Part shown: positions 43,151 through 64,000 of the stretch, one piece after another
Position numbering within the stretch: position 1 is the first letter of the stretch
Layout: each line of letters opens with the position of its first letter
From: Chrysemys picta bellii
Taxonomy: Eukaryota
Direction: 5' to 3'
DNA: 64,000 nucleotides
NCBI RefSeq assembly: GCF_011386835.1
Contig: NC_088794.1
Span: forward strand, 26,660,001-26,724,000
Position numbers and translations under genes: made by a program
Notes under the pieces: generated by a model
What the model was told of the DNA's origin: nothing
The model's input: only the letters and a program-made list of their open reading frames with translations
The model's database searches: none

Positions 43151-44287
43151 CCTGGCCTTCCTGCCCCCACCTACGTGCGATCCCCTAGTATTGTTGCCCC
43201 TCCCACTGGGGGTGACCCAATTTGTTACCCCGACCCCCAGGCGGTGTACGGTACACACATACACATGTGTTATAGCAATCGGGGGGGCGGGGGGGGGGCT
43301 GGCTGGCTCTGAATTGCATTTCCTCTTTTCTCCTATGGACAGACCCATATCCCCTCCCCACGGGTGGGTAAAACCTCATCCCTGGTGTGGCAACCTGCCT
43401 CAGCTCCTATTCCTTGTCTCCTCTTCCCTGCCCGGGGTGATCCTGAGTCTCCAGGAAGGATCCCTCTGCTCCAGTCTCAGGCTGTGCGTGAGTTGCCCCA
43501 AATAAGATCACCCCATTGTCCTCTGCTCAACCCCGTGTCCCTTCACACCACTACCATTGTGGCTGTGCCCCCGCTGGCTCCCAAACCCAAATATATTTAT
43601 GATCCTCTTCCCTTATGGGCATCTGTAACCCCCCAAGATTCTGTCTCCTCTATTCTTCCTCCAGGGTTATGTCCCCCCCCCCACCTTCCTCCAAACGCAT
43701 TCTCTGCCGGTCTGTGGCCTGCCATAACCCTAAAGTAACCTGGGTCAGGCAGAACGAGAGCCCTCTGACTATGACTCACAGGGTAGAGAGCACCCTGGGT
43801 TAGGGCATGGCTCTGCATGGAGCCCCTGAGATCCTCTCCCTGGTATGCCTGCAGCCCCTAGGTAGGAGAGCGCCTGTGTTCTGGGTGAAGGGAGTCCAGG
43901 GTTACTGCTATGACCCTTAAGGGTGTTCTCTTGTAAACATCTTTGCTCTCTAGCCTGGAGCTTGGCTGCTGGCTAGCTGAAACTGAGAAGGTCCGATGGA
44001 TTTGGGCCCAGGTACTGTCTGGGAGCATGTGAAGCAGTTTGGGGAGAACCCCTGGCCAATCTTGGCTTTTGGTTGAGCTGCAGCTTCACCCCTAGGTCAG
44101 GTAGGCATTTGCCACAGGCCCTGCTGGAGATAAACCCTTTCTGACCTTCTCTTCCAGACTCCAGAGCTCAGCTGTAGGGAGCAGGGAGAGGCTGTGGTGC
44201 AGGAGGGGAGCCGAAGCCCCTCTGGCCCTGAGGATGAGCTGGCTCTGTTCTCTGGAATGCACACGCTGAGGGCCCTGGGAAAGGAAG

Positions 44288-47200
44288 ATGCTCCGGACTA
44301 GTAACTACAGCCTGGTGCTCTCCTTGCAGTTCCTGCTGATCGTCTATGACCTCTTTGTCAACTCCTTCTCGGAGCTGCTCCGCACAGCCCCCGTCATCCA
44401 GCTTGTGCTCTTCATGTGAGGCAGCAGGGGCTAGCGGTTGTATTGGGAGAGCTGGGTTCACTTCTCAGTTGTGGGAGGGAGTGCAGGCTAGTGGTTAGAG
44501 CAGGGGACTGGGAGTCAGGAGCCCTGGGTTCTCTTCCAGCTCACTGCCACTGTAGCCAAGAAAATGGGGATGAGAGGACACACTGAGGCAATGGAGTGGA
44601 GGGGGAGGACTTGGGGAAGGTTTTGTCCTCCTTCCCCTGCAGTGGGCAGCAGTACCTGACTGCTTTCCTCTGAAGCATCAGTTGCTAGCTGCCAGGGGGG
44701 AGGGAGGCGTAGCTGCAGGGAGAATCTGGTCTGTGGACAGTGGCTCCATTCCCAGAGCCAGCCCGTGTTCTTGGCACTAAGCCAAGTGTCAGTTACATAA
44801 AGATCTGGGGAAGAACATCTGTGTCTGCCCAGATCAATTATCAAAGCAGGGAATTACTGCACTAGGAGGGGCTGCCTGGGTTGGAGGAACCACCCAGAGC
44901 TGGCTGCCTCTCCTTCCAGGGGCCTGGTGCACGGTGTTGTTCCAGCACAGGCTTTGTGTTTTGCTGTGTAGGCCAGGGCAGCTGGGACACCCCCTAGGAC
45001 AGAGGGCAATGCTTGTGTTGGCCACTGTGTCCAGCACATGGCCCCAGGGAGGGCTGTGGTCTCTGGAAGTGTGCTCATGCATCTGTCTCCCTGCAGCATC
45101 CAGGATATCGCCATCCTCTTCAACATCATCATCATCTTCCTCATGTTTTTCAACACCTTCGTCTTCCAGGCCGGCCTGGTCAACCTCCTCTTCCACAAGT
45201 TTAAAGGGACCATTGTCCTGTCGGCGGCTTACTTGGTTCTGAGCATCGCCTTCCACATCTGGATCATGGTAAGGCAGGGCTTGTTCTCAGGGGGCGTAGG
45301 AACAGCTGTACACATCTGTCTAGATGGGTAGCTCACCCTCTTCCGGAGCAGCTGGGAGCCTGGTGCATCTGATATGATACCCACTTCCTGTAGTCCCAGA
45401 ACCACCCACTGGTCTGATGTCCTGCCCCAGCTGGACACTATCCATCTGCTCTGCTAGCCCCCTTCTGGCATAAAGGTTTAGAGAGGGCCAAAATTCCCCA
45501 TTGTGCAGCAAGCCAGTCCTGCCACACTCTATAAGCAGTGTGTTGTCTTGGCCTCCTGCTGGAGAGCAGCTTATCCTGAGGGAGGAGGGCTGACCCCTGA
45601 GCCTGGAGAGATCAGAGCTTCACTCAGGGCCCCTCTCCCCTTGCAGCTCCAGAGAGGGAGGATTGCTGCTCTGTGGAACGTGTCCGTCTCCCAAGGAGGC
45701 AGCAGCGCATCTCTGGAGAGTGTGGGGCACTCTAAGGAGAGGAGTGAGGTACCAGGAGCTGCCGCTAAGCACCCTTGCACCTGGGCCCTTGCTGATTGGG
45801 GGATTCACCCCATGCTTCAAGCAGGGGGATTGGGCCTGGAGTAGAAGCGGGGGAGGGATACAAGCCCCACTTCCTCTCCTCTCCCTTGGAGGGAGCTCAG
45901 CTGGGCTCCGTGCAGCCCTTCCCCAGCACCTTCCTCCCAACTTGTGACAGGGAGCATTGTTCCTCCCCAACTCAGATCCTTTCTTTGGGGGCACATGTGC
46001 CTCCCCAGCCTCCCCCTCTCTTCTTGGAGATTGGCCGTGGGGCTGGGCAGAAGCACGCCCCATCTGCCAGATTTGGGGAGAGCTGCTCCTCCCACTAGGC
46101 AGCATAGTCAGTTATGGCTCTTTGGGGACCTAATCTGACTCGGGTCTGCGAGCAGCCCTCCTGGCCACTTCAAGCAGAGTCCCCACTGCCGAGAGCAGGA
46201 GTGGGGCCTCACGCAGCAGCCTGTTGCATGGCCATCGGCAGGTGCTGGTGTCCTGGGCCTTGTGCTCTCTTGATGCCATGGTAGGAAACATGGCTGGGGG
46301 AGGCAACTCCACAGTGAGAGTTTATTTGGAGGGGGGATAGTTTGGGATTCAAAATACATTTGAATCCAACTCCTCCCTTGGCGGCTGGGGCCAGAGGATG
46401 GTGGAGGCATTGGTTCTGCCCTCAGGAGCGGTCCCAGGAGTGATCAGAATGCTCACAGTAGGGAAATCAGAGGTGTTCACTCCTAAAGAGGTGGTGGAGT
46501 GGCTGCACTGATCCATCTAGTGTGGTAGCCCACTCCCTCCTGGCACAGCTTGGGCCATTGGCCAGTCTGTTGATATCCTATCACTTCCTCCCAAAGGGAT
46601 TTTGCTCCATCTAAAAACCCAAATCACTGCTCAGCAGAAGCCAGGCCTCAGAGAACACCCTCCTGGCAGGGGACTGTTGGAGCTAGGGTGGAAACTGACC
46701 TGTGTCCTCAACTGTGGTATCCATGAGAGGGCAGTACAGCAAGAGCCTTTCCCTTTGAAATCCCCCTCCTTCCCTTTTCAGCTCCCCCCTGAGCAGCAGC
46801 TCCTGGTCTCGCCGGTTCTGATCAGGATCTAACAGATTAACAATTGCATCCTGGGTTGGATCATGTGTGGGAGCCCTAGGGAGTTGGGTTTACACGGATG
46901 CCTGGCTTGGTCGGTACTTGCCCTGGAAAGCTCCCAAGCCTGCTTTAGAGTCTTGCTGGAATGGCTTCCCCACCAACAAGGCTAATCCTTGGGTGAGCAG
47001 TGCCAATGTCCGCGCAGGGCAGTGCATGGGATAAATCCCCACCAGGAACCAGTGCTGGTTGCAGCAGCTACAGGCTGCGAGTGTCTGTCCCAGTTTGGGT
47101 TGGAGCAAGCACAGCTGCTGGCAGCTCTGCTTGTGCCCTGCCCTCCTCGGAGGAGAAGGGTAGGGAGGGTTGCTCTCTCCCCATCCTCAAGACACCCACC

Positions 47201-51420: not shown

Positions 51421-54400
51421 TAATCCTTGCGGGAAAGACACGTGACCTCCCCATTCCCACCTTCGGGGTGCACGTCCCCCTGCCCCACCTTCTACATGGG
51501 ATGCCACGTGACCTCCCACTTCCCTGACCACCCTGGGGCTGCCATGTGACCCCGTCCTCGCGGGAAGGGCCCTTGACCTTCCCCTCCATGGGGGGGAGGA
51601 GCACATCCCTTCCCCCAATCCATCCCAGGGGGCCACCTGCCTCCCTTTCCCCCACCCCATGGACGGAGCTATGCCCCCCCCGCAGCCCTGTTTCCCTCTG
51701 ATTCCCTCCAAGCCTTTCACCCCAGATGCTGATGGAGAGGGTGTCCCTGCCCAATCGCCCCCTCCTGCACCTTCAGGAGCTGGTTTAAACGAGCAGATTT
51801 TATATCTCAGGAAAGCACCGAGCTCCCCCCCCCCCCACAAACACACAGATCCACTGACCCCAGCTGGCTCAAAGGGTGCTGAAAAGGGTCAGGCAGCGTT
51901 AGCTCTGGCAGTGAGATCCATTCTCATAGGGTTACCATATTTTAGTTTTAAAAAAGGAGGACACTCCAGGGAGCCCCAGCCCCGCCCCAAGTCCGCCCCT
52001 TCCCCAAAGTCCCCGCCCCAACTCTGCCCCTTCCCCTGAATGCTCCGTCCCCTGCTCCTCCCCCTCCCCTGCTTCGAATGTTCATGAGAAGCCTGAAACA
52101 GGGAGGCAGCAGGTAAGCTGGGGCGGGGTGCGGCGCGGCCCAGTCCGGCCCAGCGGCTCCCTCTGGCGGCCGACCGGCCCAGGCCAAGAGGCTCTGGCCC
52201 CGGTGTCTCCGGTCCGGCTCGGCTCGGGCCCGGGGGCGCCGGCCCCAGCCCGAGCGGCCCCGGCCTGAGCACCCCCGGCCCAGCACCGCCGGCCTCGGTC
52301 CTGGCCCTGGCCGAGCACCCCCGTCCCCGTCCCGGCCGAGCACCGTCGGCCCCGTCCCCGTCCCGGCCGAGCACCGTCGGCCCCGGCCCCGTCCCGGCCG
52401 AGCACCGTCGGCCCCGGCCCCGTCCCCGTCCCGGCCGAGCACCGTCGGCCCCGGCCCCGTCCCCGTCCCGGCCGAGCACCGTCGGCCCCGGCCCCGGCCC
52501 CGTCCCGGCCGAGCACCGTCGGCCCCGGCCCCGGCCCCGTCCCGGCCGAGCACCGTCGGCCCCGGCCCCGGCCCCGTCCCGGCCGAGCACCGTCGGCCCC
52601 GGCCCCGTCCNNNNNNNNNNNNNNNNNNNNNNNNNNNNNNNNNNNNNNNNNNNNNNNNNNNNNNNNNNNNNNNNNNNNNNNNNNNNNNNNNNNNNNNNNN
52701 NNNNNNNNNNNNNNNNNNNNNNNNNNNNNNNNNNNNNNNNNNNNNNNNNNNNNNNNNNNNNNNNNNNNNNNNNNNNNNNNNNNNNNNNNNNNNNNNNNNN
52801 NNNNNNNNNNNNNNNNNNNNNNNNNNNNNNNNNNNNNNNNNNNNNNNNNNNNNNNNNNNNNNNNNNNNNNNNNNNNNNNNNNNNNNNNNNNNNNNNNNNN
52901 NNNNNNNNNNNNNNNNNNNNNNNNNNNNNNNNNNNNNNNNNNNNNNNNNNNNNNNNNNNNNNNNNNNNNNNNNNNNNNNNNNNNNNNNNNNNNNNNNNNN
53001 NNNNNNNNNNNNNNNNNNNNNNNNNNNNNNNNNNNNNNNNNNNNNNNNNNNNNNNNNNNNNNNNNNNNNNNNNNNNNNNNNNNNNNNNNNNNNNNNNNNN
53101 NNNNNNNNNNNNNNNNNNNNNNNNNNNNNNNNNNNNNNNNNNNNNNNNNNNNNNNNNNNNNNNNNNNNNNNNNNNNNNNNNNNNNNNNNNNNNNNNNNNN
53201 NNNNNNNNNNNNNNNNNNNNNNNNNNNNNNNNNNNNNNNNNNNNNNNNNNNNNNNNNNNNNNNNNNNNNNNNNNNNNNNNNNNNNNNNNNNNNNNNNNNN
53301 NNNNNNNNNNNNNNNNNNNNNNNNNNNNNNNNNNNNNNNNNNNNNNNNNNNNNNNNNNNNNNNNNNNNNNNNNNNNNNNNNNNNNNNNNNNNNNNNNNNN
53401 NNNNNNNNNNNNNNNNNNNNNNNNNNNNNNNNNNNNNNNNNNNNNNNNNNNNNNNNNNNNNNNNNNNNNNNNNNNNNNNNNNNNNNNNNNNNNNNNNNNN
53501 NNNNNNNNNNNNNNNNNNNNNNNNNNNNNNNNNNNNNNNNNNNNNNNNNNNNNNNNNNNNNNNNNNNNNNNNNNNNNNNNNNNNNNNNNNNNNACCGTCG
53601 GCCCCGGCCCCGGCCCCGTCCCCGGCNNNNNNNNNNNNNNNNNNNNNNNNNNNNNNNNNNNNNNNNNNNNNNNNNNNNNNNNNNNNNNNNNNNNNNNNNN
53701 NNNNNNNNNNNNNNNNNNNNNNNNNNNNNNNNNNNNNNNNNNNNNNNNNNNNNNNNNNNNNNNNNNNNNNNNNNNNNNNNNNNNNNNNNNNNNNNNNNNN
53801 NNNNNNNNGGCCCCGTCCCCGGCCCCGTCCCGGCCGAGCACCGTCGGCCCCGTCCCCGTCCCGGCCGAGCACCGTCGGCCCCGTCCCGGCCGAGCAGCGC
53901 CAGCCCCGTCCCCGTCCCGTCCGAGCACCGTCGGCCCCGGCCCGGCTGAGCACCGCCAGCCCCAGCCGAGCACCCCCGCCCCTGCACCCCCGGCCCTGGC
54001 CGAGCACTGCCGGGCCCTCCCTCCCTATTTTCCCAGACATGTCTGGCTTTTTGGAATTTCCTCCCAGACGGAGGATTTGAGGCCCAAAAAGCCGGACATG
54101 TCCGGGAAAATCCGGACGTATGGTAACCCTAATTCTCATCACTAACCTGATTACGATTTATCGGTACCTTGAAAACACCGCATACTACAGGGTTCTGTCA
54201 TCTCATAGACTTTAAGATCAGAAGGGACCATCATGATCATCTAGTCCGGGATGGGCAAACTTTTTGGCCCAAGGGCTACATCTGGTAATGGAAATTGTAT
54301 AGAGGGCCATGAATGATCACAAAATTGGGTGTTGGGGTGCGGGAGGGGGTGAGGGCTCTGGCTGGGGGTGCGAGCTCTGGGGTGGAGCCAGACATGAGGA

Positions 54401-57400
54401 GTTCAGGGTGCGGGAGGGTGGCTCCGGGCTGGGGCAGGGGGTTTGGAGGGCAGGAGGGGAATCAGGGCTGGGGCAGGTGGTTGGGGCATGGGAGGAGGTC
54501 AGGGGTGCAGGCTCCAGGCAGTGCTTACCTCAAGCAGCTCCCAAAAGCAGCGACATGTCCCACCTCTGGCTCCTATGTGGCGATGCAGCCAGGCGGCTTG
54601 GCGCACTGCCTGTCCGCAGGCGCCGCCCCTGCAGCTCCCATTGGCCATGGGTCCAATGAGAGCTGCGGGGACGGCGCTTGAGGTGGGGGCAGCGTGCGGA
54701 GCCCCCTGACTGCACCTACGTGTAGGAGCCAGAGAGGGGACATGCCACTGGTTCCGGGAGCCACACCCTGCCCCCTGGATTAAAATATCTGAAGGGCCGC
54801 ATGCGGCCTCCGGACCGTAGTTTGCCCACCCCAATCTAGTCTGACCCCCTGCACATTGCAGGCCACAGAACCTCACCCACCCACTCCTGAAATAGACCCC
54901 TAACCTCTTGAAGTCCTCAAATCATGGTTTAAAGACTTAAGGTCACAGAGAATCCACCATTTACAGACATATTCCTGGGAACTTTGTTTCACCCCAGTCA
55001 GAACAGAAGACAAGAGCTATGGGTCTCTGGCTTGTTACTTCCAAAACAACATGTTCTACTGCTAAATGACCAGCCCACACAGCTGAAAGCTTGTCTGCCA
55101 CATCACTGCTGGTGGAGTCAATGCTTCACCTTGGCCTGAAGCACCAACCAGATAGAAACAGCCGGCTTGGAGAGTGCGAAGCCAGCTCCTGCTGCCGAGT
55201 TTCACTCCTTGCTGCCTGATACCCTGCTGTAAAGTGGGGTAGGTGGCACACTACTGTGTGGCTGGGCATGTGTAGGAGCTCTTTGATCTTAGTTGGGCCT
55301 GCTGCCCTGCCATGTTTTCTCTTTAAATACAAGTTTCCTGTTCTCAAAAATCCTCTTCCTGCCAAGGGTGGCACCAAGCAGAGGGAGAAAAAAACAAAAT
55401 GTAGTGGGGAAAGCTCCTGCCTGCAGACAGAAAGTGGAGAGGCTTAGAGAACCACAGTGCCTGCTTCTAGCGGAGAAGAGCCAACCACGAAACAACGGCT
55501 GGAAGCTGAAGCTGAAGCTGGACAAATTCAAATTAGACAATAGGCCGACGTTCCCAACAGTGAGGGGACAGACCATGGGAAAAAATGACCCAGGGAAGTG
55601 GGGGAGTTACATCACCTCTCTGGAAGATGCTTTAGTCAAACGCAAGTTACTGGACTCATGCCAGATGTGAGGTCAGCCCCAAGTGGCAGCTCGTCCGGCC
55701 TCTGGGGTAACTTGGCAACCTGTGCTATACAGGAGGTCAGACTCAGTGATCCCTTCTGGCCTTAGACGATGTGAAATCACAATAGCACCCAGCAGCCCCA
55801 GCTGAGATCAGGGCTCCATTCTGCTGCACTAATGCATTGCGAGAACCAGCCCCTGCCCCAGTGAAACAAAATAGGCAAAAGCTGGGAGAAAGCACTGGAA
55901 TGGGTTACCTAGAGAGGTGGTGGAATCTCCTTCCTTAGAGGTTTTTAAGGTCAGGCTTGACAAAGCCCTGGCTGGGATGATTTAGTTGGGAATTGGTCCT
56001 GCTTGAGCAGGGGGTTGGACTAGATGACCTCCTGAAGTCCCTTCCAACCCTGATATTCTATGATTCTATGAAATGAAGGATTCTTATCCCCATTTTACAG
56101 ATGGGAAACTGAGGCCCAGAGAGACTCAGGGTCAGATTTTGAGGTGCCTAAATAGGCAGGTGAGCACCTGTCTACATTTTTAGGTGCCTACATCTCTTTG
56201 TAAGTCTGTGCTCAGTGGCTCGCCCAGGGTCATGCAAGGAGCCTGTTGCAGAGCTGGGAAAGGATCCAGGCCAGTAGTACCTTGACCACCTATCCTCTCA
56301 GTCAGTCCCTTGTGTTCAGCCTATCTCAGAGAGCCAGACAATCCCTCATCCTACGAGGGCGGGGCTCCCATGGGGAGTTAGGGGTTAATGCAGCTCAGGC
56401 CCTTTTGGCTTCCTCTGCCCTCTTTGGGGGGAAGAATAAGGCCGGCAGGCCTGCATGGGGAGCAGCACCTCGCCCATTCATGCTATTCATCTGCCCATCC
56501 CCCAGGCCGCCAGCTCTCCTCTACGCCGCTGGAAATCCTGCTCTTCCTCAATGGATGGTATTATGCCACTTACTTCCTCCTGGAGATCTTCATATTCGTC
56601 TATAAAGGTGAGTTCCCTCCACTGCCATTCCAGATCACCAGGGACTACTACAGAACAGCCTTTGGCAGCAGGGCTGCCCTCTGTGCTGTGGTATCAAGCG
56701 CCACTTGACTGAGGGCAAGGCAGGCAGGACAAGCCCAGTGGAGTGCCAGCTGACTTATTCCACCCAAGCCCCTCAGGCCTCCCAGCCCATCCATGCGTTT
56801 CAGCCACTCCCAGCCCGTTGCAGGGCTGCATCTGGTGGGAGGGAGGAGTAAGAGGAAGCCTTTGGCTCTGATGCTGGGCAAGGGCCGGGACCCATTAGAT
56901 GAGCCACTCTGCACTGCATTTCTGTGGTCCTGCTGGCACCTCTCTGGGGCTCTCCCCCAGACTTGCTGTCCCTGGAGGAAGGCCTTCGGGCTGAGAACCA
57001 CTAGTTATTCACGGCCATCTCCCCTTCCTTAGGGGCCTGTCCCGGTGAGGGACAGTGGCACCCCAGAAAGAGGGTTTGGAGGCCTTGCACTCCTCCTGAA
57101 ACAGGTGACTTGTGTCCACAGGGCTGCTGTTACCATACCCCTCTGCCAACTTGGCCCTGGATCTGGTCATGCTCTTCCTCTACCTCGGCATTGAAGTCAC
57201 TCGGATATTTTTTGGTGAGTGCCTAAGATTAACAGCCAGCTCTGGAACAACAGGGCAAGCAGCCCCCTGGGGGCAAACAGCTCTGAGACAGCTGGACTGG
57301 TGCCTGATTTCACTGGGCCGCCAAGCAGCCAGCACATGACTGGCTTTTGCTCACTCAGCTTGGAGATGGATCAGTGCCTAGAGTTGAAGAGCTCTTTGCC

Positions 57401-58400
57401 TGAGCCAGCCAGGTTTCTGGACCAGGGGCCAGAGGCCTAGAGAGGAAAGGCTCCATGTCCCATTCCCTGCCCTTGGGCTGGATTGGAGCCTGTGTCCTAG
57501 AGGGGATAGGCTCTATATCCCTGTCCCCCCAGTTGTGCCCCTCCAGGAAGCTGCGTGCGTGGATGGCTGCAGGGCAGGGAGCAGTTGCCTTACTAACTGT
57601 GCCACGTGGCAGGCTCCAAGGGGAACCTGTGCCAGCGGAAGGTGCCGCTCTCCATCAGCCTGGCCTTGACATTCCCAGCGGCAGTGATGGCGGCCTATTA
57701 CCTGCTCCTGCAGACCTACGCCCTCCGGCTGGAGGCCATCCTCAATGCCATCCTGCTGCTCTTCTATGCCGTCGAGCTGCTCCTGGGCATCCTCACCCTG
57801 GCCTCCTTCTCCAGGTACCCCACCCCCTCCTGCCCTGAGCAGCAGCACCACTGGGAGGCAGTGGGAAACTGAGCAGCTGTGGGCAGGGTCTGGAGGGGTA
57901 ACATGGGAGGAGCTGGGGTGGACAGACTGGCCAGGAGGGAGACAGGATCCAAGGGGTGAAAAAGCACTGGGGCTGGGGGAGACTGGACCATTCATGGGCT
58001 AGTGGAAATGAGGGAATAACTAGGTCATGAGCAAGGAGGGAGGCTGTGGTGGAGACAGGATGAGGGAGGGAAAGTGTGGAGAGAAAACGCTGATGATACA
58101 AACAGGGAATGGCTGGGCAGGTGGCTCATGCACATGCCTGGGGATCAGGACTCCTGGGTGCCATTCCTGACTGCCCCTGCCTCGGTTTCCTCATCTGCAC
58201 TCCTCTCCTCTGGTTGGCTGCTACGAGGACAGATTCCCAGGGGTGTGTGGAAGCAGTTGGGGTGACAGGGTTGCCCAGGGATGTGAGGGAAGCTCCCCCC
58301 CCCAGCCAGAGCCGTGTGGGGTTGGAGAGGCTGCTGAGGGTCTGCAATTGACGGCCAGGCTCTCTCCTGTTTATCTCCCTCTAGGGTGGACTCATATTAA
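51269..58400 (+). CDS. TMEM216: Transmembrane protein 216 (ciliary transition zone), 141 aa
   Basis: Starts [28 protein letters not shown], contains [10 protein letters not shown] and [10 protein letters not shown], ends FSRVDSY*. Exons: 51269-51281, 56506-56607, 57122-57214, 57613-57814, 58385-58400 (426 nt). Confidence 0.95.
52230..54010. repeat. GC-rich minisatellite, ~25-37-bp units built from CCGAGCACCGTCGG and (CCCCGG/CCCCGT)n
   Basis: Tandem units directly visible on both sides of, and between, the assembly gaps. Confidence 0.9.
52611..53808. other. Assembly gaps (N at 52611-53593 and 53627-53808)
   Basis: Runs of N with a 33-bp repeat island between them. Confidence 1.
54246..54833. 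mobile_element. hAT (Charlie-like) element inserted into a CR1 3'-end remnant
   Basis: Ends GGGATGGGCAAAC ... GTTTGCCCACCCC, ATCTAGT duplicated (54239-54245 and 54834-54840). Flanks 54200-54245 and 54834-54965 rejoin as minus-strand CR1 tail. Confidence 0.8.
55430..55770 (+). mobile_element. Older degraded CR1-like 3' fragment
   Basis: ORF2 C-terminal-like segment ([14 protein letters not shown]) and degraded 3' UTR. Confidence 0.55.
55895..56071 (+). mobile_element. CR1 LINE 3' end
   Basis: CR1 3' UTR GGGGGTTGGACTAGATGACCTCC...CCCTTCCAACCC followed by an ATTCTATGATTCTATGA tail. Confidence 0.9.
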
Positions 58401-59081
58401 GGCTCCATCCAGCCTGTTCCGGGCCAGACAAGGCGACGCGTTGCCCCAGCGCCTGGGACTGAGGCCACACATTCCCTCCCTCCACGGCTGGTCTGATGGC
58501 GGCGTCTCAGCCCCTCAGAGCAGAGCTAGACCCAGCCACAGCCTCGTTCCACATCAGCCCCTCCTGGGCATGAAGCCACCACTGGCGTGCCCAGCAACTT
58601 GGAGAGAGACTTTAACTCGCATCCCAGACCTGGCGCCTCATGAAGCAGCCATTCCGTGTGCCCAGGCATCACTCACCCGCTGCAGGCACCGCCCTCCCCT
58701 GCCTGCTGTGCAGTGGGGGAGAGGAGGGGGGGAAGAGGGGGAGAGGCTGCTGGGAGCTGACATGGATCCCATTCCGGCCCCTACAGCCAGGGCTTAGAGT
58801 TTGTCCGAGCCCACGCATACAAGGCCAAGTGGCCCCTGGCCCAGACCACACCCCCATGGATCATGCCTGCACCTTCTGTGTCCTCCCATTTCAGCACGGG
58901 GGTGGAGAGGCAGACACCCAGGGCCCCCCTTGTAAGTATTAATAAGCTCCTGTCTATCGCATGTGTGACTGATTGAGAGGTGCTTCCACCCGCTCCCCCA
59001 CATTCAGTGTTATTTGCTGTAGCAGTGACTCGTGGCACTTTTCCCCCTCCTCTCGCATCCTCCAAATCAATACTATTTTCC

Positions 59082-59087
59082 AATAAA
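59082..59087 (+). terminator. Likely TMEM216 polyadenylation signal
   Basis: AATAAA followed by the T-rich tract TATTTATTTTTCT. Confidence 0.6.
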
Positions 59088-59482
59088 TATTTATTTTTCT
59101 GCTACTGCTGCTGCCTGGAGCCTTTTCATTAGAGTAGGGCTTCCCCCAGGAGGCAGCAAGGAGGCACCTCCCCCCTGGGCCACTAGGGGGCAGCCTGCTC
59201 CCACTTCAGGACACATGAATGCTCCCTGCGCCACAGAGCACTGCTCTGGCTGGGAGAAGCCCCATCAATTCGCCTCCCCTGACCCACATCTCCTCCCAAC
59301 AGCTGGCTCCAGGTGGCAGGCCAGGCCCATGCCAGCCTGCACTGTCTGCCCCAGCCTGGACCCACTCTCCAGGCAGCAGGAGGGATACTGATAGTGAGGC
59401 AAGATGGGCAATGACCGGGTGGCAGCAGGAGGGGAGGGGGTCCCAGCAATAGGCTGGCAGCACTTGGACAGTGGAAGAGAAG

Positions 59483-59488
59483 TTTATT
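59483..59488 (-). terminator. Likely polyadenylation signal of the fascin-like gene
   Basis: TTTATT on plus, 18 nt downstream of the TAA stop on the minus strand. Confidence 0.65.
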
Positions 59489-59505: not shown

Positions 59506-62500
59506 TTAGTAGTGGAAGGGCGTGGCAGAGGCTGCGTCTGAGGCCCCTGCCCACAGGCGGCCCCCCGCCTCCGCCACCAGGTACTTGCTGTTGGGAGCCT
59601 TCAGCACGAGGCAGCTGGAGGAGATGAACTGGAGGGTGAAGTTGCTGGGGTGGTCTCCGTTCGCCATGACCAGCCCGTCCTTATCCAGGCTCCAGTACTT
59701 GGTGGCTGTGGGCCAAAGGGAGCAGTTAGGGCTGGGTGACATGGATCATGGCAGAGGGGGCGGCCAGAGTGAAAGGGCACACTTGTAACCTAGGGGAGGT
59801 GCTGCCGCAGGATGTTATGGGTGGAAGCATTCCAGGAGATGCACACCAGAGCCTTGCTGCAGAGCGGACACTAGGTGGGGCCAGCATGGACTCTGCTCCT
59901 AGGAGGATTATGGGAGGGGCAGAGGGCGCTTCCCCCTTGCCTCTGAAGTGCTGGCTACTGCAAATTGATGGGAAGGGGAGGAGCTGGGGGCCTTCAGCAG
60001 TTCATTGACTGACCCCCCAGTGATGGAAAAGGGCATTTCCAGCCTGGGCAGAGGAACCCTGGGCAACCCTCCTTCCTAAGACATGGCCAAGGGCCCCTCC
60101 CCCCACTTCCAGTCAGGTTCCCCTAGCACCCCCATCCCCAGGGATACTCCAGTGCCTGGCACACCCTCATCACCCTGCACACCCACACTCCAGCCCCTGG
60201 CACAGATCCTCAGTCCCCTCCCCATGCCTGGTACTCCCCAGCCCCCTGGCGTCTCCATGCCCCAGACCCTGGCAGGAACCCCGTGCCGCACCGACTCTGA
60301 AGTGGCAGAAGCCGTCCTCGCTGAGTGTCAGGGCACTGGCATCGTAGGCTGGCCGGTTTCCGTCCAGGCGCTGCGTCCCGGGGAACAGCCCCACGAAGCC
60401 CGCCTCGCTCTGCAGGATCAGCAGGGGCCGGTTCACCAGCAGCAGCAGAAACTCCTCCCCCTTGCCTGAGGGCACAGATCCCCGCAGGCAGCGTTAGCTC
60501 CAGCTGGCCCCACACAGGGCACAGGATGGAGGCTACCAGCTAGGGTGACCAGATGTCCCGATTTTATAGGGACAGTCCCAATTTTTGGGTCTTTTTCTTA
60601 TATAGGCTCCTATTACCCCCCACCCCCTGTCCCGATTTTTCACACTTACTGTCTGGTCACCCTACTACCGGCCTGCAGAGGCGCTGTGTGGAGGCAGACA
60701 GGGCCAAAGCTCTGTCAAGTCAGGTCAGGAGGGGCTGCTGCTGAGAACCATCCCTTCAGTATATGGGGCAGGCCAGGGCCCACTCCCCCGGGGATGGGGG
60801 GAATAGGGGTGACTATAGGAGGCCAAAGCTGCTGTGTGCCCAAAATCACCATCGCTGCTGAAGAGCAAGCCCTGGAAACGGACGCTCTCCTTGCAGGGCA
60901 GTCCTGGCCCCTGCCCCAGGGCCTCATTCCAAGGCCAGGGCGGACCCTGGCTGCAACCAAGGGGGGCAGTTAGTGCCAGTGATCTGGGCAGAGACGTCAC
61001 GTGAGCCCCACAACAGCCACTGCACGGGAGGGATTTATCAGCGCCGCCCCGGGGCTGGATGGGAAGTGTGGGGCACTGAGGTGAAGGGCCTCTATCGCAT
61101 TGTCTACCCCCCTCCCCAATTAGGGGTATCGGCTTCGTCCCGCCCCTACCTGCTGCCTCGGGCACCAGCAGCAGCTGCCCATTGGGCCTGGTGGCCATGT
61201 GTCTGCCGTCAGCCATTCGCAGGGTCACCCTCTGCTCCCGGTACTGGAGTGAGAACCAGACCCCCTTGTCTTGGGTGCTGGTGCTCACCACAGAATCCTT
61301 GGGGCCCTGCAAGGAGGCAGCATTAGGGGGCGGGGACAGGTGCTCAGCCCTCATGTTCCCCCTTTGGGGGGGATCAGGAGCTGCTCCCGTTCCCAGTTGG
61401 GGTCTAGCCACAGGCCCGGTCCTTGGAGCAATGTTCCCCTGCCACAACCTAACACCTCCCTAAGAGAGGGGCAAACATGGCTCTGGGGCAGGGCTAAGGA
61501 GGGCACCAGCTGGGCACAGGGCTGGGCAGAGGAGGGACAGAGGGACTGAGATTCAAAGCTCTCCTACCCAGGCCCCGGCAGGGCCGGCTTTAGGAAGTGC
61601 GGGGCCCAATTCGAACATTTTCAGCGGGGCCCCGGCAGGGATGACTAAAAAAAAAAAAATTCATGTAAAAAAAAGCCTTTCATTTCTTAGCAACCGGTTC
61701 CCTATAAAAAGTTCTGATTTAAGGGATGTGCCACAGTATGTATTTTTTGTACCAATAGGGTTACCATATGTCCATATTTTCCTGGGAGGAATTTTTAAAT
61801 TTTTAAATTTTAAAAATTCCTCCCAGACGGCGATTTAAGAACCAAAAAGCCTGACATGTCCGGAAAAATACGGATGTATGTTAACCCTACCTAAAGTTCT
61901 TTTTTTAAAAAGATGGGCCTGAACTAGAAATGAGCTCCGTTTCACATGTGTGGGTCCCCACCACTCCCTGGGGGTGTGCACATGTGTGGGTCCCAGCTGC
62001 TCCCTGCCCCCCTCATTGAAGCTTCCGGGAAAGGTGTGCAGGATTACTGCCCTGGGAACTCCAGGGCACCACTGGACATGGGGCTGGCTGGAGACAGGGC
62101 AGGGGCTGACTGGAGGTAGGGTCTGGCTGCAGGCAGGGGAAGGGATGAGGGGCTGGCTGGAGACAGGGGTGTGTGCGGTGGGCTGGCTGGCTTCAGGCAG
62201 GGCCGCAGGGGTGTGTGGCATGGGTTGGCAGGGCTGGAGACAGAGGAGTGCGGGACTGGCTGGCTTCAGGCAGGGGTGTGCGGCAGGGGTTGGCTGGAAA
62301 CAGGGCAGAGGGTGCGGGGCTGGCTACAGGCAGGGCAGGGGGTGCAGGGCTGGTGTGGGCAGGGCATAGGGTGCAGGGCTGGTGCGGGCAGGGGTGTGTG
62401 TGGGGCTGGCTGGCTTCAGGAAGGGCTGCAGGGGGGTGCGGCAGGGGCTGGCTGTGGGCAGGGGGTGCAGGGCTGGCTGCAGGCAGTAGCAGGGCAGGGG

Positions 62501-63707
62501 GGGCAGGGCTGGTGCGGGCAGGGGGTGTGGCAGGGGCTGGCTGCGGGCAGGGGGTGCGGGGCTGGCTGGAGACGGGCTGGCTGGAGGCAGGGCAGGGGGT
62601 GCGGGACTGGCTGGAGACGGGGCAGGGGGTGCGGGGCTGGCTAGAGATGGGCTGGTGTGGGCAGGGTAGGAGGTGCGGGGCTGGCTGGAGACAGGGCAGG
62701 GGATGTGGGGTTGGCTAGAGATGGGCTTGCTGCGGGCAGGGCAGGGGGTGCGGGGCTGGAGGCAGGGTAGGGGGTGCAGCAGGGGCTGGCTGCGGGCAGG
62801 GCAGGGGGTGTGGGGCTGGTGCAGGCAGGGGGTGCGGGTACAGCCCACCCTGTACGGTGAGTGCCCCCTCCTCCTCCCTCCCCCACTGGGGTAGCAGCAG
62901 CAGCAGCCGCCCGTGGCTTGGGGGCTATTTAAAGGGCCCGGGGCTCCCCTGCTTCCACTGCCCCAGCCCTGTATATAGCCAAGGGAGCCCTGGGGAAGCG
63001 GTGGGGCTCCAGTGGCTATTTAAAGGGCCAGGGCGGTAGAAGCAACGGGAGCCCTGGACTTTTTAAATAGCCCCCAGAGCTCTGCAGCCCTACCCCAGAG
63101 CTCCAGCAGTGGGGCTCTGGTGGGAATTTAAAGGGCCTGGGGCTCAAGCCCCTGCTGGGAGCCCTGGGTCCTTTAAATTGCCCCCTGGGGAAGCCGGGCC
63201 ACCCTGGTACCGGGGCTTGGGCGCGGGGCCCTTTTAGGCACGGGGCCCGATTCAGGGGAATTGGTTGAATTGGCCTAAAGCCGGCCCTGGGCCCCGAAGC
63301 AAGGGGATTTAACCCCTAACTTGCTGGCACCCTCTGAATAGGCCACTCCTGGAACGGGGCACACTCTAGCAGCTGGGATTGGATAGCAGGGCAGGGGAGA
63401 GCCAGGGCCAGCCTGCCCTGTGCTGGCAGTTGCCTACATCCCTGTCCCAGCGATGTGTTCGCCCCCTGCTGGTAGATCGCCAGAGCTGCACTGCGGCAGG
63501 CAGCATGCTGCAGGCCAAAGCCGGTGGTTCTGTCGATCTCCCCCCATCGGGGGATCTGTGCCAATCCCCTGGCTCCGGCCACACTCACCACAGCAAGATA
63601 GGTGCCGGAGGAGCTGCGAAAGCAGGCCTGCTTAGTGACATCGTTCAGCAGCAGCTGGAAAATCTCCGTGTTGCCGACGGACGTGGCATTGGCATAGATG
63701 TCAGCCC
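59506..63707 (-). CDS. Fascin-family actin-bundling protein, last four coding exons (beta-trefoil domains 3-4; 5'-partial)
   Basis: Exons 63589-63707, 61150-61306, 60292-60465 and 59506-59705 have AG/GT ends and consistent phases (1,0,1,1). Translation includes GADIYANATSVGNTEIFQLLLNDVTKQACFRSSSGTYL, RVTLRMADGRHMATRPNGQL, EEFLLLLVNRPLLILQSEAGFVG, LDGNRPAYD, KYWSL and VLKAPNSKYLVAEAGGRLWA, aligning by eye with FSCN1 residues ~278-493. AATAAA lies 18 nt after the stop. Confidence 0.88.
60541..60664. mobile_element. Short hAT-type MITE, same family as 32228-32351, opposite orientation
   Basis: TAGGGTGACCAGA ... TCTGGTCACCCTA; TSD CTACCAGC / CTACCGGC (7/8 match). Confidence 0.88.
61579..63289. 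mobile_element. ~1.7-kb hAT-type non-autonomous element in the fascin-like gene intron
   Basis: TIR CAGGGCCGGCTTTAGG ... CCTAAAGCCGGCCCTG, TSD GGCCCCGG / GGCCCCGA. Contains a segment (61756-61889) with ends of the TAGGGTTACCAT family. Confidence 0.8.
62070..62840. repeat. Degenerate G-rich minisatellite (GGGGCTGGCTG...CAGGGCAGGGGGTGC units)
   Basis: Directly visible ~28-30-bp imperfect tandem units inside the hAT element. Confidence 0.85.
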
Positions 63708-64000
63708 CTGTGGGCAGCAAGAGACACACAGTAAAAAGGCTGGCAGTGTGGTGCCAGCCTGGAAAGTCAATAACGCCCTCCCCCAGGGCCCAGAAGGGCC
63801 GGTATGTGTATCACTGCTGCCCTCTGCTGGCTGCAGCTGGACCTACTCCAGTCAACTTCCATCCACCACAGCAGATGGGGACACAGCCCTGTGAAGAGAT
63901 CCCAAGGGCTAACTGGGACCCTGTGGCTGCCCACATAATGCAGAGCCCCCTTGAAAATATGAATGGAGGGTAATTAACAATGGGATACCTGCCTGAGGCT

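What the first reader, a model, noticed from the sequence alone, without database searches (positions are those of the whole stretch)
59506..63707. Divergent fascin-family gene tail-to-tail with TMEM216: candidate additional vertebrate fascin paralog
Seen: four clean exons with intact splice sites and frame, a stop and a polyA signal, encoding fascin-type beta-trefoil domains 3-4. Established: human FSCN1, FSCN2 and FSCN3 map to 7p22, 17q25 and 7q32, and the human gene after TMEM216 is CPSF7, so no fascin sits at this locus in human. Inference: this may be a fourth fascin lineage (ohnolog or ancient duplicate) retained in reptiles and lost in mammals, or a relocated divergent FSCN3-type gene. 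An actin bundler next to two ciliary genes may share their regulatory domain.
Basis: partly seen in the sequence, partly recalled or inferred. Interest (0 to 1): 0.8.

Follow-up and report, generated by a model that had tools for sequence, protein, structure and literature searches.

The report
Fourth vertebrate fascin gene, lost in mammals
The window holds the last four exons of an intact, conserved gene for a fourth type of the actin-bundling protein fascin, which sharks, coelacanth, a frog and reptiles keep between CPSF7 and TMEM216, which no mammal was found to have, and which the fascin papers I could search do not mention.

Summary
Four minus-strand exons (63707-63589, 61306-61150, 60465-60292, 59705-59506) have AG/GT borders and join in frame. 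They give 215 residues, a TAA stop and an AATAAA 18 nt after the stop. They are coding exons 4-7 of a 7-exon fascin gene; exons 1-3 lie beyond base 64000.

The gene is not FSCN1, FSCN2 or FSCN3. In a maximum-likelihood tree it sits in a separate clade with 100/100 support, here called FSCN-L. NCBI labels its members only "fascin-like". The clade holds turtle, alligator, python, tegu, tailed frog, coelacanth and cartilaginous-fish genes.

Turtles and pythons also carry a true FSCN3, next to a PAX gene in the turtle. Sharks have FSCN2, FSCN3 and FSCN-L.

Position is conserved: CPSF7 > FSCN-L > < TMEM216 < TMEM138 in python. Alligator and a second turtle show the same TMEM216 side. A shark has the CPSF6/7-type neighbour.

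The gene is under purifying selection (dN/dS 0.11-0.24 between two turtles, no indels). A shared 119-nt exon and phase-0 intron suggest FSCN3 is its sister.

The main reading, a fourth ancient fascin lineage absent from mammals, is supported. Expression, actin bundling and shared regulation with the ciliary genes are untested. Interest is moderate.

The parts
63589..63707 (-). Coding exon 4 of 7 (119 nt). It enters in phase 1 and leaves in phase 0. It encodes the middle of beta-trefoil 3, equivalent to fascin-1 from about residue 279.
   Evidence: AG before and GTGAGT after. Weak Pfam Fascin match. Same 119-nt exon in Emydura, python and tailed frog, 116 nt in alligator. tblastn to alligator 71%, python 62%.
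61150..61306 (-). Coding exon 5 of 7 (157 nt), the end of beta-trefoil 3.
   Evidence: AG before and GTAGGG after. Pfam Fascin 19.4 bits. 157 nt in Emydura, alligator and tailed frog, 154 nt in python.
60292..60465 (-). Coding exon 6 of 7 (174 nt), the first half of beta-trefoil 4. It includes the position equivalent to fascin-1 R398, which is F here.
   Evidence: AG before and GTGCGG after. 174 nt in all four orthologues. 75% identical to alligator. Site table.
59506..59705 (-). Coding exon 7 of 7 (197 nt of coding sequence plus TAA at 59506-59508), the second half of beta-trefoil 4. It carries the clade-typical C-terminus ...PFHY and V at the fascin-1 K471 position.
   Evidence: Pfam Fascin 27.5 bits, above the cut-off. 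Aligns to PDB fascin-1 residues 431-488. E 1.5e-34 to the Emydura fascin-like protein. Site table.
59483..59488 (-). AATAAA polyadenylation hexamer 18 nt after the stop, implying a very short 3' UTR.
   Evidence: Read from the sequence. An AATAAA lies 15-29 nt after the stop in Emydura, alligator and python too.
61579..63289 (.). A 1.7-kb element with terminal inverted repeats, inserted in intron 4. It is not part of the gene's function. It holds a G-rich minisatellite at about 62.1-62.84 kb.
   Evidence: 16-nt perfect inverted ends. This segment is exactly what Emydura intron 4 lacks. Tandem repeats.
56382..59105 (+). TMEM216, the convergent neighbour. Coding exons lie at 56.4-57.9 kb, a last mini-exon maps near 58.40 kb, and AATAAA is at 59082. 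Its 3' end lies about 360 bp from the 3' end of the fascin gene.
   Evidence: Pfam Transmemb_17 on three exon ORFs. Collinear with the Emydura and alligator TMEM216 models.

Best explanation
The window carries coding exons 4-7 of a functional seven-exon gene for a fourth jawed-vertebrate fascin paralog. I call it FSCN-L here; NCBI calls its members 'fascin-like' or 'fascin'.

The paralog arose no later than the jawed-vertebrate ancestor. Its ancestral home is next to CPSF7 and convergent with TMEM216. Cartilaginous fishes, coelacanth, at least one frog (Ascaphus), squamates, crocodilians and turtles keep it. No copy was found in mammals, and none in birds or ray-finned fishes. Its closest paralog is probably FSCN3.

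The protein is a single chain of about 490-500 residues with four beta-trefoils and a fascin-1-like fold.

By inference it cross-links actin filaments as a monomer, through two surfaces formed by trefoils 1+4 and 2+3. The window encodes most of trefoil 3 and all of trefoil 4.

It probably differs from fascin-1 in strength or control. A basic residue kept in nearly every other fascin (K471 of fascin-1) is V or I throughout the clade. The R398 position is not basic. The PKC switch serine S39 is gone in sauropsids.

Shown here: the exons, the selection, the separate clade, the synteny and the fold. Inferred: actin bundling, the changed regulation and the losses.
For: Exons and frame:
- The anatomy is, and fascin identity.
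- The Emydura orthologue (locus L001) has an intact 7-exon, 500-residue reading frame with canonical splice sites. Its last four exon lengths match the window.
- Alligator, python and Ascaphus have the same layout.

Selection:
- Window against Emydura: 89% amino-acid identity, no indels in 645 nt, dN/dS 0.24 (NG86) or 0.11 (YN00).
- Coding identity is 90% against 64-70% in the introns.
- Full-length dN/dS is 0.13-0.34 between turtle, alligator, python and frog.
- The polyA signal is conserved.

Separate clade:
- In the careful ML tree, FSCN-L, FSCN2 and FSCN3 are each 100/100 and FSCN1 is 100/99.
- Window + Emydura 100/95, + alligator 99/97, sauropsids 100/99.
- Identity of the window peptide: 70% alligator, 60% python, 53% Ascaphus, 40-48% shark, 31-36% FSCN1/2, 25-31% FSCN3.

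Four paralogs coexist:
- Fascin-3 is present in Pelodiscus, Gopherus, Sphenodon and Liasis, and the Pelodiscus FSCN3 lies beside a PAX gene.
- Turtles have fascin-2.
- Catsharks have fascin-3-like, fascin-2b and fascin-like genes.

Synteny.

Sisterhood with FSCN3: both share a 119-nt exon followed by a phase-0 intron. FSCN2 and amphioxus instead share a phase-2 intron 14-15 codons downstream.

Fold:
- Pfam finds four Fascin stretches in the orthologues.
- The python protein aligns end to end with fascin-1 (E 4e-102).
- An AlphaFold model of the alligator orthologue has pLDDT 92, and Foldseek gives TM 0.83-0.93 to human fascin-1.

Actin-contact residues: the named residues come from PMC12086090. 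The F29, E27, K22 and R149-R151 positions are kept or conservatively replaced in nearly all FSCN-L sequences compared; exceptions are H at F29 in Ascaphus, Q at K150 in turtle and alligator, and the skate copy of the intronless shark lineage.
Against: - Only four of the seven exons are in the window, so intactness of the whole gene in this species is not shown.
- There is no expression evidence of any kind.
- NCBI's only turtle model found (Emydura, 223 residues) covers just these four exons. No full-length turtle model turned up. This could mean weak or absent transcript support for exons 1-3.
- The K471 and R398 positions are not basic, and S39 is lost, so actin bundling may be weak, altered or absent.
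- FSCN1 is represented only by teleosts in my tree.
- The order of the paralog clades is unresolved by sequence. The FSCN3 sisterhood rests on one intron character.
- Absences in mammals, birds and ray-finned fishes rest on one word-indexed search and on remembered human gene order, not on genome scans.
Confidence: 0.85

Rival explanations
1. It is the turtle orthologue of FSCN3, moved to a new chromosomal position and divergent.
For: FSCN-L and FSCN3 share the 119-nt exon and phase-0 intron. One Callorhinchus member of the clade is labelled 'fascin-3' in nr. A FSCN3 + FSCN-L grouping is not rejected (p-AU 0.44).
Against: Turtles, tuatara, lizards and snakes have a separate fascin-3, and the python Liasis has both genes on different chromosomes. 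The turtle FSCN3 sits beside a PAX gene; from memory this matches human FSCN3-PAX4. The FSCN3 clade (100/100) excludes the window gene. Holding the sauropsid genes with FSCN3, apart from the shark and frog members, is rejected (p-AU 0.0035). The N-terminal introns differ. Identity to FSCN3 is only 25-31%.
Confidence: 0.03
2. It is a decaying or truncated relic in turtles: the C-terminal exons survive, but the gene is no longer expressed as a full fascin.
For: The only turtle gene model found is a 223-residue fragment starting inside intron 3. No full-length turtle model appeared in the search that found alligator and python models. Exons 1-3 are outside the window. There are no expression data.
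Against: Two turtle lineages keep all four exons free of stops and indels, with dN/dS 0.11-0.24 and exons better conserved than introns. Emydura exons 1-3 are intact with canonical splice sites, and against alligator their dN/dS is 0.25. The polyA signal is conserved. The ATG used by the short Emydura model is not an ATG in the window, so that model looks like under-prediction.
Confidence: 0.1
3. It is a recent, reptile-specific duplicate of FSCN1 or FSCN2 that diverged fast, not an ancient paralog.
For: Sequence identity is a little higher to FSCN1/2 (31-36%) than to FSCN3. The best tree weakly (43/53) puts FSCN-L on the FSCN1/2 side.
Against: Orthologues with the same neighbours exist in Ascaphus (TMEM216) and in a shark (CPSF6/7-type gene). 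Coelacanth and chimaera members fall in the same 100/100 clade. The seven-exon layout is the same from frog to turtle and differs from FSCN2.
Confidence: 0.02

Closest known systems
FSCN3 (fascin-3; described as testis fascin in mammals)
   Same: Four-trefoil fascin of about 485-500 residues. It shares with FSCN-L the 119-nt exon followed by a phase-0 intron, which FSCN2 and amphioxus lack. Both are long-branch, fast-evolving paralogs. Both lack a basic residue at the fascin-1 R398 position.
   Different: Separate 100/100 clade, with only 25-31% identity. Different locus: beside a PAX gene rather than between CPSF7 and TMEM216. Different N-terminal introns: one after codon 33, against two after about codons 103 and 185. 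FSCN3 keeps a basic residue at the K471 position except in catshark, while FSCN-L has V or I. FSCN3 is retained in mammals and no mammalian FSCN-L was found.
FSCN1 (fascin-1), the solved and best-studied actin bundler
   Same: End-to-end alignment (E 4e-102, 36% identity) and the same fold (TM 0.83-0.93) for FSCN-L orthologues. The F29, E27, K22 and R149-R151 positions named as actin contacts (PMC12086090) are kept or conservatively replaced, with few exceptions.
   Different: In sauropsids S39 (the PKC site) is replaced by V or Q. K471 is V or I in the whole clade. R398 is F, S or A in tetrapods. The C-terminus reads F(H/R)Y instead of LWEY. FSCN-L has seven coding exons; the FSCN2 type has five (measured for FSCN2, from memory for FSCN1).
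FSCN2 (retinal and hair-cell fascin)
   Same: Same family and domain plan. Both are present in sharks, coelacanth and turtles alongside FSCN-L.
   Different: Separate 100/100 clade. Five coding exons with the ancestral phase-2 intron. Much slower evolving, judging by branch lengths.
NCBI automated models named 'fascin-like' or 'fascin' (for example XP_067397611.1 Emydura, XP_078399051.1 Cetorhinus, the alligator 582-residue 'fascin')
   Same: These are the same gene family member in other species. The window gene is their orthologue.
   Different: They are unnamed as a group. The Emydura model is truncated to 223 residues, and the alligator model carries an apparently spurious 84-residue N-terminal extension. 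I found no paper that treats them as a fourth paralog.

Membership tests
Fascin family (Pfam PF06268) | Significant match to the Fascin domain profile | tested here: met
   Exon 7 scores 27.5 bits against a cut-off of 23.1. Exons 4 and 5 give sub-threshold matches and exon 6 none when scanned alone. Full-length orthologues score 142-184 bits with four stretches.
Fascin family (Pfam PF06268) | A single chain of four tandem beta-trefoils arranged in two lobes | tested here: inconclusive
   Met for the orthologues. The AlphaFold model of the alligator protein has pLDDT 92 and TM 0.83-0.93 to human fascin-1, and the python protein aligns end to end. For the window species only trefoil 3 (partial) and trefoil 4 can be seen, because exons 1-3 are off-window.
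Fascin family (Pfam PF06268) | Conservation of residues that contact F-actin in fascin-1 (F29, E27, K43, S39, R149, R398; also K471) | tested here: inconclusive
   The F29, E27, K22, K41/K43 and R149-R151 positions are mostly kept in FSCN-L. S39 is lost in sauropsids and in the intron-containing shark lineage. The R398 position is non-basic. K471 is V or I in all members (residues named in PMC12086090, and PMC8696220).
Fascin family (Pfam PF06268) | Bundles actin filaments in vitro or in cells | not testable with these tools
   Needs purified protein and a co-sedimentation or imaging assay.
FSCN3 orthologue group | Falls inside the FSCN3 clade | tested here: not met
   The FSCN3 clade (100/100) excludes it. 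The AU test rejects the sauropsid genes + FSCN3 grouping (p 0.0035).
FSCN3 orthologue group | Conserved neighbourhood (next to PAX4) and a single FSCN3-type gene per genome | tested here: not met
   Pelodiscus FSCN3 is beside a PAX/homeodomain gene, while the window gene is beside TMEM216. Liasis has both genes.
FSCN1/FSCN2 orthologue groups | Falls inside the clade and has the five-exon layout | tested here: not met
   Separate clades. FSCN-L has seven coding exons and a different intron 4 position and phase from FSCN2. Tetrapod FSCN1 was not sampled.
Ohnolog from the two vertebrate genome duplications | Orthologues in both cartilaginous and bony vertebrates, but a single gene in amphioxus | tested here: met
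   Each of FSCN2, FSCN3 and FSCN-L has shark and sarcopterygian members. Amphioxus falls with the invertebrate outgroups, outside the vertebrate clade. Only one amphioxus fascin cluster came up in my searches, and gene number in amphioxus was not surveyed.
Ohnolog from the two vertebrate genome duplications | The four loci lie in paralogous chromosome blocks | not tested
   There is only a lead from remembered human map positions: FSCN3-PAX4 at 7q32 against PAX6 and CPSF7/TMEM216 on chromosome 11, and FSCN1-ACTB against FSCN2-ACTG1.

The most novel reading that the evidence does not exclude
FSCN-L is the genome-duplication twin of FSCN3, so jawed vertebrates began with four fascins arranged as (FSCN1, FSCN2) and (FSCN3, FSCN-L). 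It is a working actin cross-linker with a rebuilt trefoil-4 actin surface and no PKC off-switch. It would serve a specialised actin structure in non-mammalian vertebrates, for example in germ cells, sensory cells or ciliated cells. Its constant convergent pairing with TMEM216 would reflect shared regulation, and its loss in mammals would coincide with a change in that structure.
Probability: 0.2. Interest if true: 0.6.

Novelty: new member of a known kind. Interest (0 to 1): 0.5.

Why it matters
Reviews and primary papers state that vertebrates have three fascins (PMC7698196; PMC3082522). The data here indicate four ancient lineages, one of which mammals apparently lack.

This changes how the family's history should be drawn. 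It gives FSCN3, a poorly understood and fast-evolving member, a probable sister for comparison.

It also offers a natural experiment on fascin's actin-binding site 1. The K471 position is hydrophobic across the clade, and the S39 switch is lost in sauropsids.

For annotation, it shows that the Emydura 'fascin-like' model is truncated. It also shows that the scattered 'fascin-like' labels form one orthologue group that deserves a name.

It is not a new kind of system. It is a fairly ordinary case of an old paralog lost in mammals.

Tried and rejected
1. Searching the large word-indexed protein collection with the window peptide was not possible. The peptide has no single reference and single exons fall outside the length filter. 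I searched the representative library with exon 7 and then used the full-length relatives it found as queries.
2. Look-ups of the coelacanth fascin-like and fascin-3 loci and of Pelodiscus FSCN2 found nothing on record. One look-up timed out. Coelacanth synteny is therefore unknown.
3. DNA for the two shark loci was not delivered. Only gene ranges and neighbours are known, so shark exon structure is untested.
4. My first memory-based idea, that FSCN3 has the same seven-exon layout, was wrong in detail. FSCN3 of Pelodiscus has six coding exons with a different N-terminal intron. Only the 119-nt exon and phase-0 intron are shared.
5. The first tblastn-based exon map lost exons to my filters. I replaced it with exact matching.
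6. Literature searches for 'FSCN4' or 'fascin-4', for fascin paralog evolution and for the TMEM138-TMEM216 evolution paper (the Science 2012 paper is not held) gave no description of this gene.
7. The relocated-FSCN3, recent-duplicate and relic readings were considered and are scored under the rival explanations.
8. Presence or absence in birds, mammals, lungfish and ray-finned fishes could not be checked by genome scan with the tools and caps available.


Full report
**1. What is in the sequence**

On the minus strand, four open segments lie at 63707-63589, 61306-61150, 60465-60292 and 59705-59506. Each is preceded by a pyrimidine tract and AG. The first three are each followed by a GT donor. 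Their lengths are 119, 157, 174 and 200 nt.

Joined, they read in one frame. Two nucleotides finish a codon from an upstream exon, followed by 215 codons and a TAA at 59508-59506. An AATAAA lies at 59488-59483, 18 nt after the stop.

Taken alone, exon 7 passes the Pfam Fascin cut-off. Exons 4 and 5 give weaker Fascin matches. Exon 7 aligns to residues 431-488 of human fascin-1 in the PDB. Through the python orthologue, the window peptide corresponds to about residues 279-493 of fascin-1. That is beta-trefoil 3 without its first strands, plus all of trefoil 4.

**2. The neighbourhood**

- TMEM216 lies on the plus strand at 56.4-57.9 kb (Pfam Transmemb_17 on three exon ORFs). A last mini-exon maps near 58.40 kb and its AATAAA is at 59082.
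- TMEM138 lies on the plus strand at 45.0-48.9 kb by Pfam; an upstream exon ORF at 44270-44416, conserved with alligator, gave no Pfam match.
- The order is therefore TMEM138 > TMEM216 > < fascin. The two convergent 3' ends are about 360 bp apart.
- The window is collinear with a scaffold of the turtle Emydura macquarii at 72-84% DNA identity across all three genes. The window is therefore from another turtle.

**3. The gene is seven exons long and the window holds the last four**

A search of 1.8 billion representative proteins with exon 7 gave two close hits.
- A 223-residue NCBI model, 'fascin-like' of Emydura (E 1.5e-34).
- An unnamed 95-residue fragment.

More distant hits were a shark 'fascin-like' protein of 487 residues and a coelacanth 'fascin-like' fragment.

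The Emydura model covers exactly the same four exons and starts at an ATG inside intron 3. That ATG is not present in the window.

Upstream of the Emydura model, tblastn with the alligator, python, frog and shark proteins finds three more exons. A splice-aware reconstruction gives an intact reading frame of 500 residues. Its seven exons measure 321, 250, 282, 119, 157, 174 and 200 nt, all with GT-AG borders.

The annotated alligator, python (Liasis) and tailed-frog (Ascaphus) genes have the same layout: a variable first exon, then 250, 282, 119 (116), 157 (154), 174 and 200 (206) nt. So the window's exons are numbers 4-7. Exons 1-3 should lie beyond base 64000, and homologous intron-3 sequence runs to the window's end.

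**4. It is under purifying selection**

- Window against Emydura over 645 coding nt: no indels, 89% amino-acid identity, most differences at third codon positions.
- dN/dS is 0.24 (NG86) or 0.11 (YN00).
- Coding identity is 90%, against about 64-70% for the two introns compared.
- Full-length comparisons among turtle, alligator, python and frog give dN/dS 0.13-0.34. Exons 1-3 are as constrained as exons 4-7.
- An AATAAA 15-29 nt after the stop is present in all four sauropsids.

This argues against a pseudogene, although there is no expression evidence.

**5. It is not FSCN1, 2 or 3**

Searches with full-length relatives recovered three sets of proteins.
- (a) The 'fascin-like' set: two groups in sharks, rays and chimaera, plus Ascaphus, alligator, two pythons and a tegu.
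- (b) Genuine fascin-3 of mammals, coelacanth, paddlefish, turtles (Pelodiscus, Gopherus), tuatara, lizards and snakes including Liasis.
- (c) Fascin-2 of all jawed-vertebrate groups, including five turtles and sharks.

Catsharks also have a 'fascin-3-like' gene.

A careful maximum-likelihood tree of 56 proteins (LG+C20+F+G4) gives these clades.
- FSCN2: 100/100.
- FSCN3: 100/100.
- Teleost FSCN1: 100/99.
- Lamprey fascin.
- A fourth clade, FSCN-L: 100/100, stem length 0.84, holding all the 'fascin-like' proteins.

Within FSCN-L the window peptide joins Emydura (100/95), then alligator (99/97), then squamates (100/99).

Identity of the window peptide falls steadily: 89% Emydura, 70% alligator, 60% python, 53% Ascaphus, 40-48% cartilaginous fish, 31-36% FSCN1/2, 25-31% FSCN3.

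Forcing the sauropsid genes to group with FSCN3, apart from the shark and frog members, is rejected (p-AU 0.0035). Because Liasis carries both FSCN3 and FSCN-L on different chromosomes, the 'relocated FSCN3' reading fails.

**6. Synteny**

- Emydura: FSCN-L > < TMEM216 < TMEM138.
- Alligator: the same, followed by a cytochrome b561 gene.
- Liasis: a CPSF7-type gene (RRM plus CPSF6/7 domain) > FSCN-L > < TMEM216 < TMEM138.
- Ascaphus: FSCN-L > an unknown 275-residue gene > < TMEM216.
- White shark: a CPSF6/7-type gene lies about 10 kb upstream of the intron-containing FSCN-L gene, in the same orientation as in python.
- By contrast, the turtle FSCN3 lies beside a PAX/homeodomain gene. From memory, this is as human FSCN3 lies beside PAX4.

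From memory of the human map, TMEM216 and CPSF7 are immediate convergent neighbours. The fascin gene is therefore missing from exactly this interval in human. No mammalian, avian or ray-finned-fish member of the clade appeared. That search is word-indexed, so these absences are provisional.

**7. Relation to the other paralogs**

Sequence does not resolve the order of the paralog clades. Gene structure helps.

| Gene | Coding exon lengths (nt) | Intron phases |
|---|---|---|
| Amphioxus fascin | 820, 178, 162, 128, 206 | 1, 2, 2, 1 |
| Turtle FSCN2 | 823, 157, 122, 168, 206 | 1, 2, 1, 1 |
| Turtle FSCN3 | 99, 700, 119, 160, 171, 206 | 0, 1, 0, 1, 1 |
| FSCN-L | ~300, 250, 282, 119, 157, 174, 200 | 0, 1, 1, 0, 1, 1 |

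FSCN3 and FSCN-L share a 119-nt exon closed by a phase-0 intron at the same alignment column. FSCN2 and amphioxus share a phase-2 intron 14-15 codons further on. Taking amphioxus as the outgroup state, the phase-0 intron is a derived character uniting FSCN3 and FSCN-L.

This fits a history of two duplications giving (FSCN1, FSCN2) and (FSCN3, FSCN-L). It is not contradicted by the AU test (p 0.44). It rests on one character, and FSCN1 structure was not measured here.

**8. What the protein is likely to do**

Evidence for a standard fascin fold:
- The orthologues have four Pfam Fascin stretches.
- The python protein aligns with fascin-1 from end to end (E 4e-102).
- An AlphaFold model of the alligator protein (pLDDT 92, pTM 0.89) superposes on human fascin-1 structures with TM 0.83-0.93.

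In fascin-1, trefoils 1+4 and 2+3 form the two actin-binding sites. F29, E27, K43, S39, R149 and R398 are named contacts (PMC12086090). K471 acetylation is reported to lower bundling (PMC8696220).

In FSCN-L the pattern is mixed.
- The F29, E27, K22, K41/K43 and R149-R151 positions are mostly kept or conservatively replaced.
- The K471 position is V or I in every member. Among the other fascins compared it is K or R in all but catshark FSCN3 (C).
- The R398 position is F in the window and non-basic across the clade. It also varies in FSCN2.
- S39 is V or Q in sauropsids and I in the intron-containing shark lineage.

My inference is a monomeric actin cross-linker whose trefoil-4 contact and PKC control differ from fascin-1. 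I am moderately confident of actin binding and less so of efficient bundling. Nothing here speaks to tissue or to shared regulation with the ciliary genes.

**9. Novelty**

Automated pipelines already predict these genes as 'fascin-like' or 'fascin'. Papers I could search say vertebrates have three fascins (PMC7698196; PMC3082522). Searches for a fourth fascin found nothing.

I rate it a new member of a known kind. It is a real and tidy finding for the family's evolution and for annotation, but it is an ordinary type of event: an ancient paralog lost in mammals. Interest 0.5.

**10. Limits**

- Only four exons of this species' gene are seen.
- There are no expression data.
- FSCN1 is sampled from teleosts only.
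- The losses are inferred from limited searches.
- The masked N runs at 52611-53593 and 53627-53808 were left untouched.

Noticed in passing
related proteins P0005, P0073, P0083-P0089 and P0097 (sharks, rays, chimaera); place shown: Cartilaginous fishes have a second FSCN-L copy whose called gene range in Scyliorhinus canicula is 1464 bp for 487 codons, so it is intronless. It forms a 100/100 sister clade to the intron-containing copy. A Callorhinchus fragment (P0097) is 79% identical to shark P0005 and joined this clade in the quick tree. This looks like a very old retrocopy kept intact with a constant 487-residue length. In both catsharks it sits on the same chromosome-sized record as the fascin-3-like gene.
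   Followed up: partly
L001:5808-12313 (Emydura macquarii, GCA_026122565.2): NCBI's model XP_067397611.1 (223 residues) is an under-prediction. Three intact upstream exons give a 500-residue protein, and the model's start codon lies in intron 3 and is not conserved in the window. The alligator model (582 residues) seems to carry a spurious 84-residue N-terminal extension.
   Followed up: yes
window 61579-63289: A 1.7-kb insertion in intron 4 is bounded by perfect 16-nt inverted repeats (CAGGGCCGGCTTTAGG and its complement). It is absent from the Emydura intron. It looks like a non-autonomous DNA transposon and holds a G-rich minisatellite with units of about 30 nt at 62.1-62.84 kb.
   Followed up: partly
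window 60541-60666 and 61756-61889: Two short elements have GGGTGACCAGATGTCC- or GGGTTACCATATGTCC-type inverted ends and AT-rich centres. They look like MITEs, one in intron 5 and one inside the larger insertion. The second has a 22-nt near-perfect central palindrome (I3).
   Followed up: no
window 52611-53593 and 53627-53808: Two runs of N lie between TMEM138 and TMEM216. From memory, in mammals this intergenic stretch holds the shared regulatory element of the two ciliopathy genes.
   Followed up: no
L004:16357-20057 (Ascaphus truei): In the tailed frog an unannotated 275-residue gene with no Pfam hit lies between FSCN-L and TMEM216. TMEM138 is not within the 10 kb shown. From memory, TMEM138 and TMEM216 are reported to have become neighbours only in amniotes (Lee et al. 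2012, not held), which would be consistent.
   Followed up: no
L005, L006, L007 (Pelodiscus FSCN3, Chelonia FSCN2, amphioxus fascin): All vertebrate fascin paralogs measured share an intron at one column (phase 1) where amphioxus has one 12 columns downstream (phase 2). The last intron and the intron after the large N-terminal region are at common positions in all of them.
   Followed up: partly
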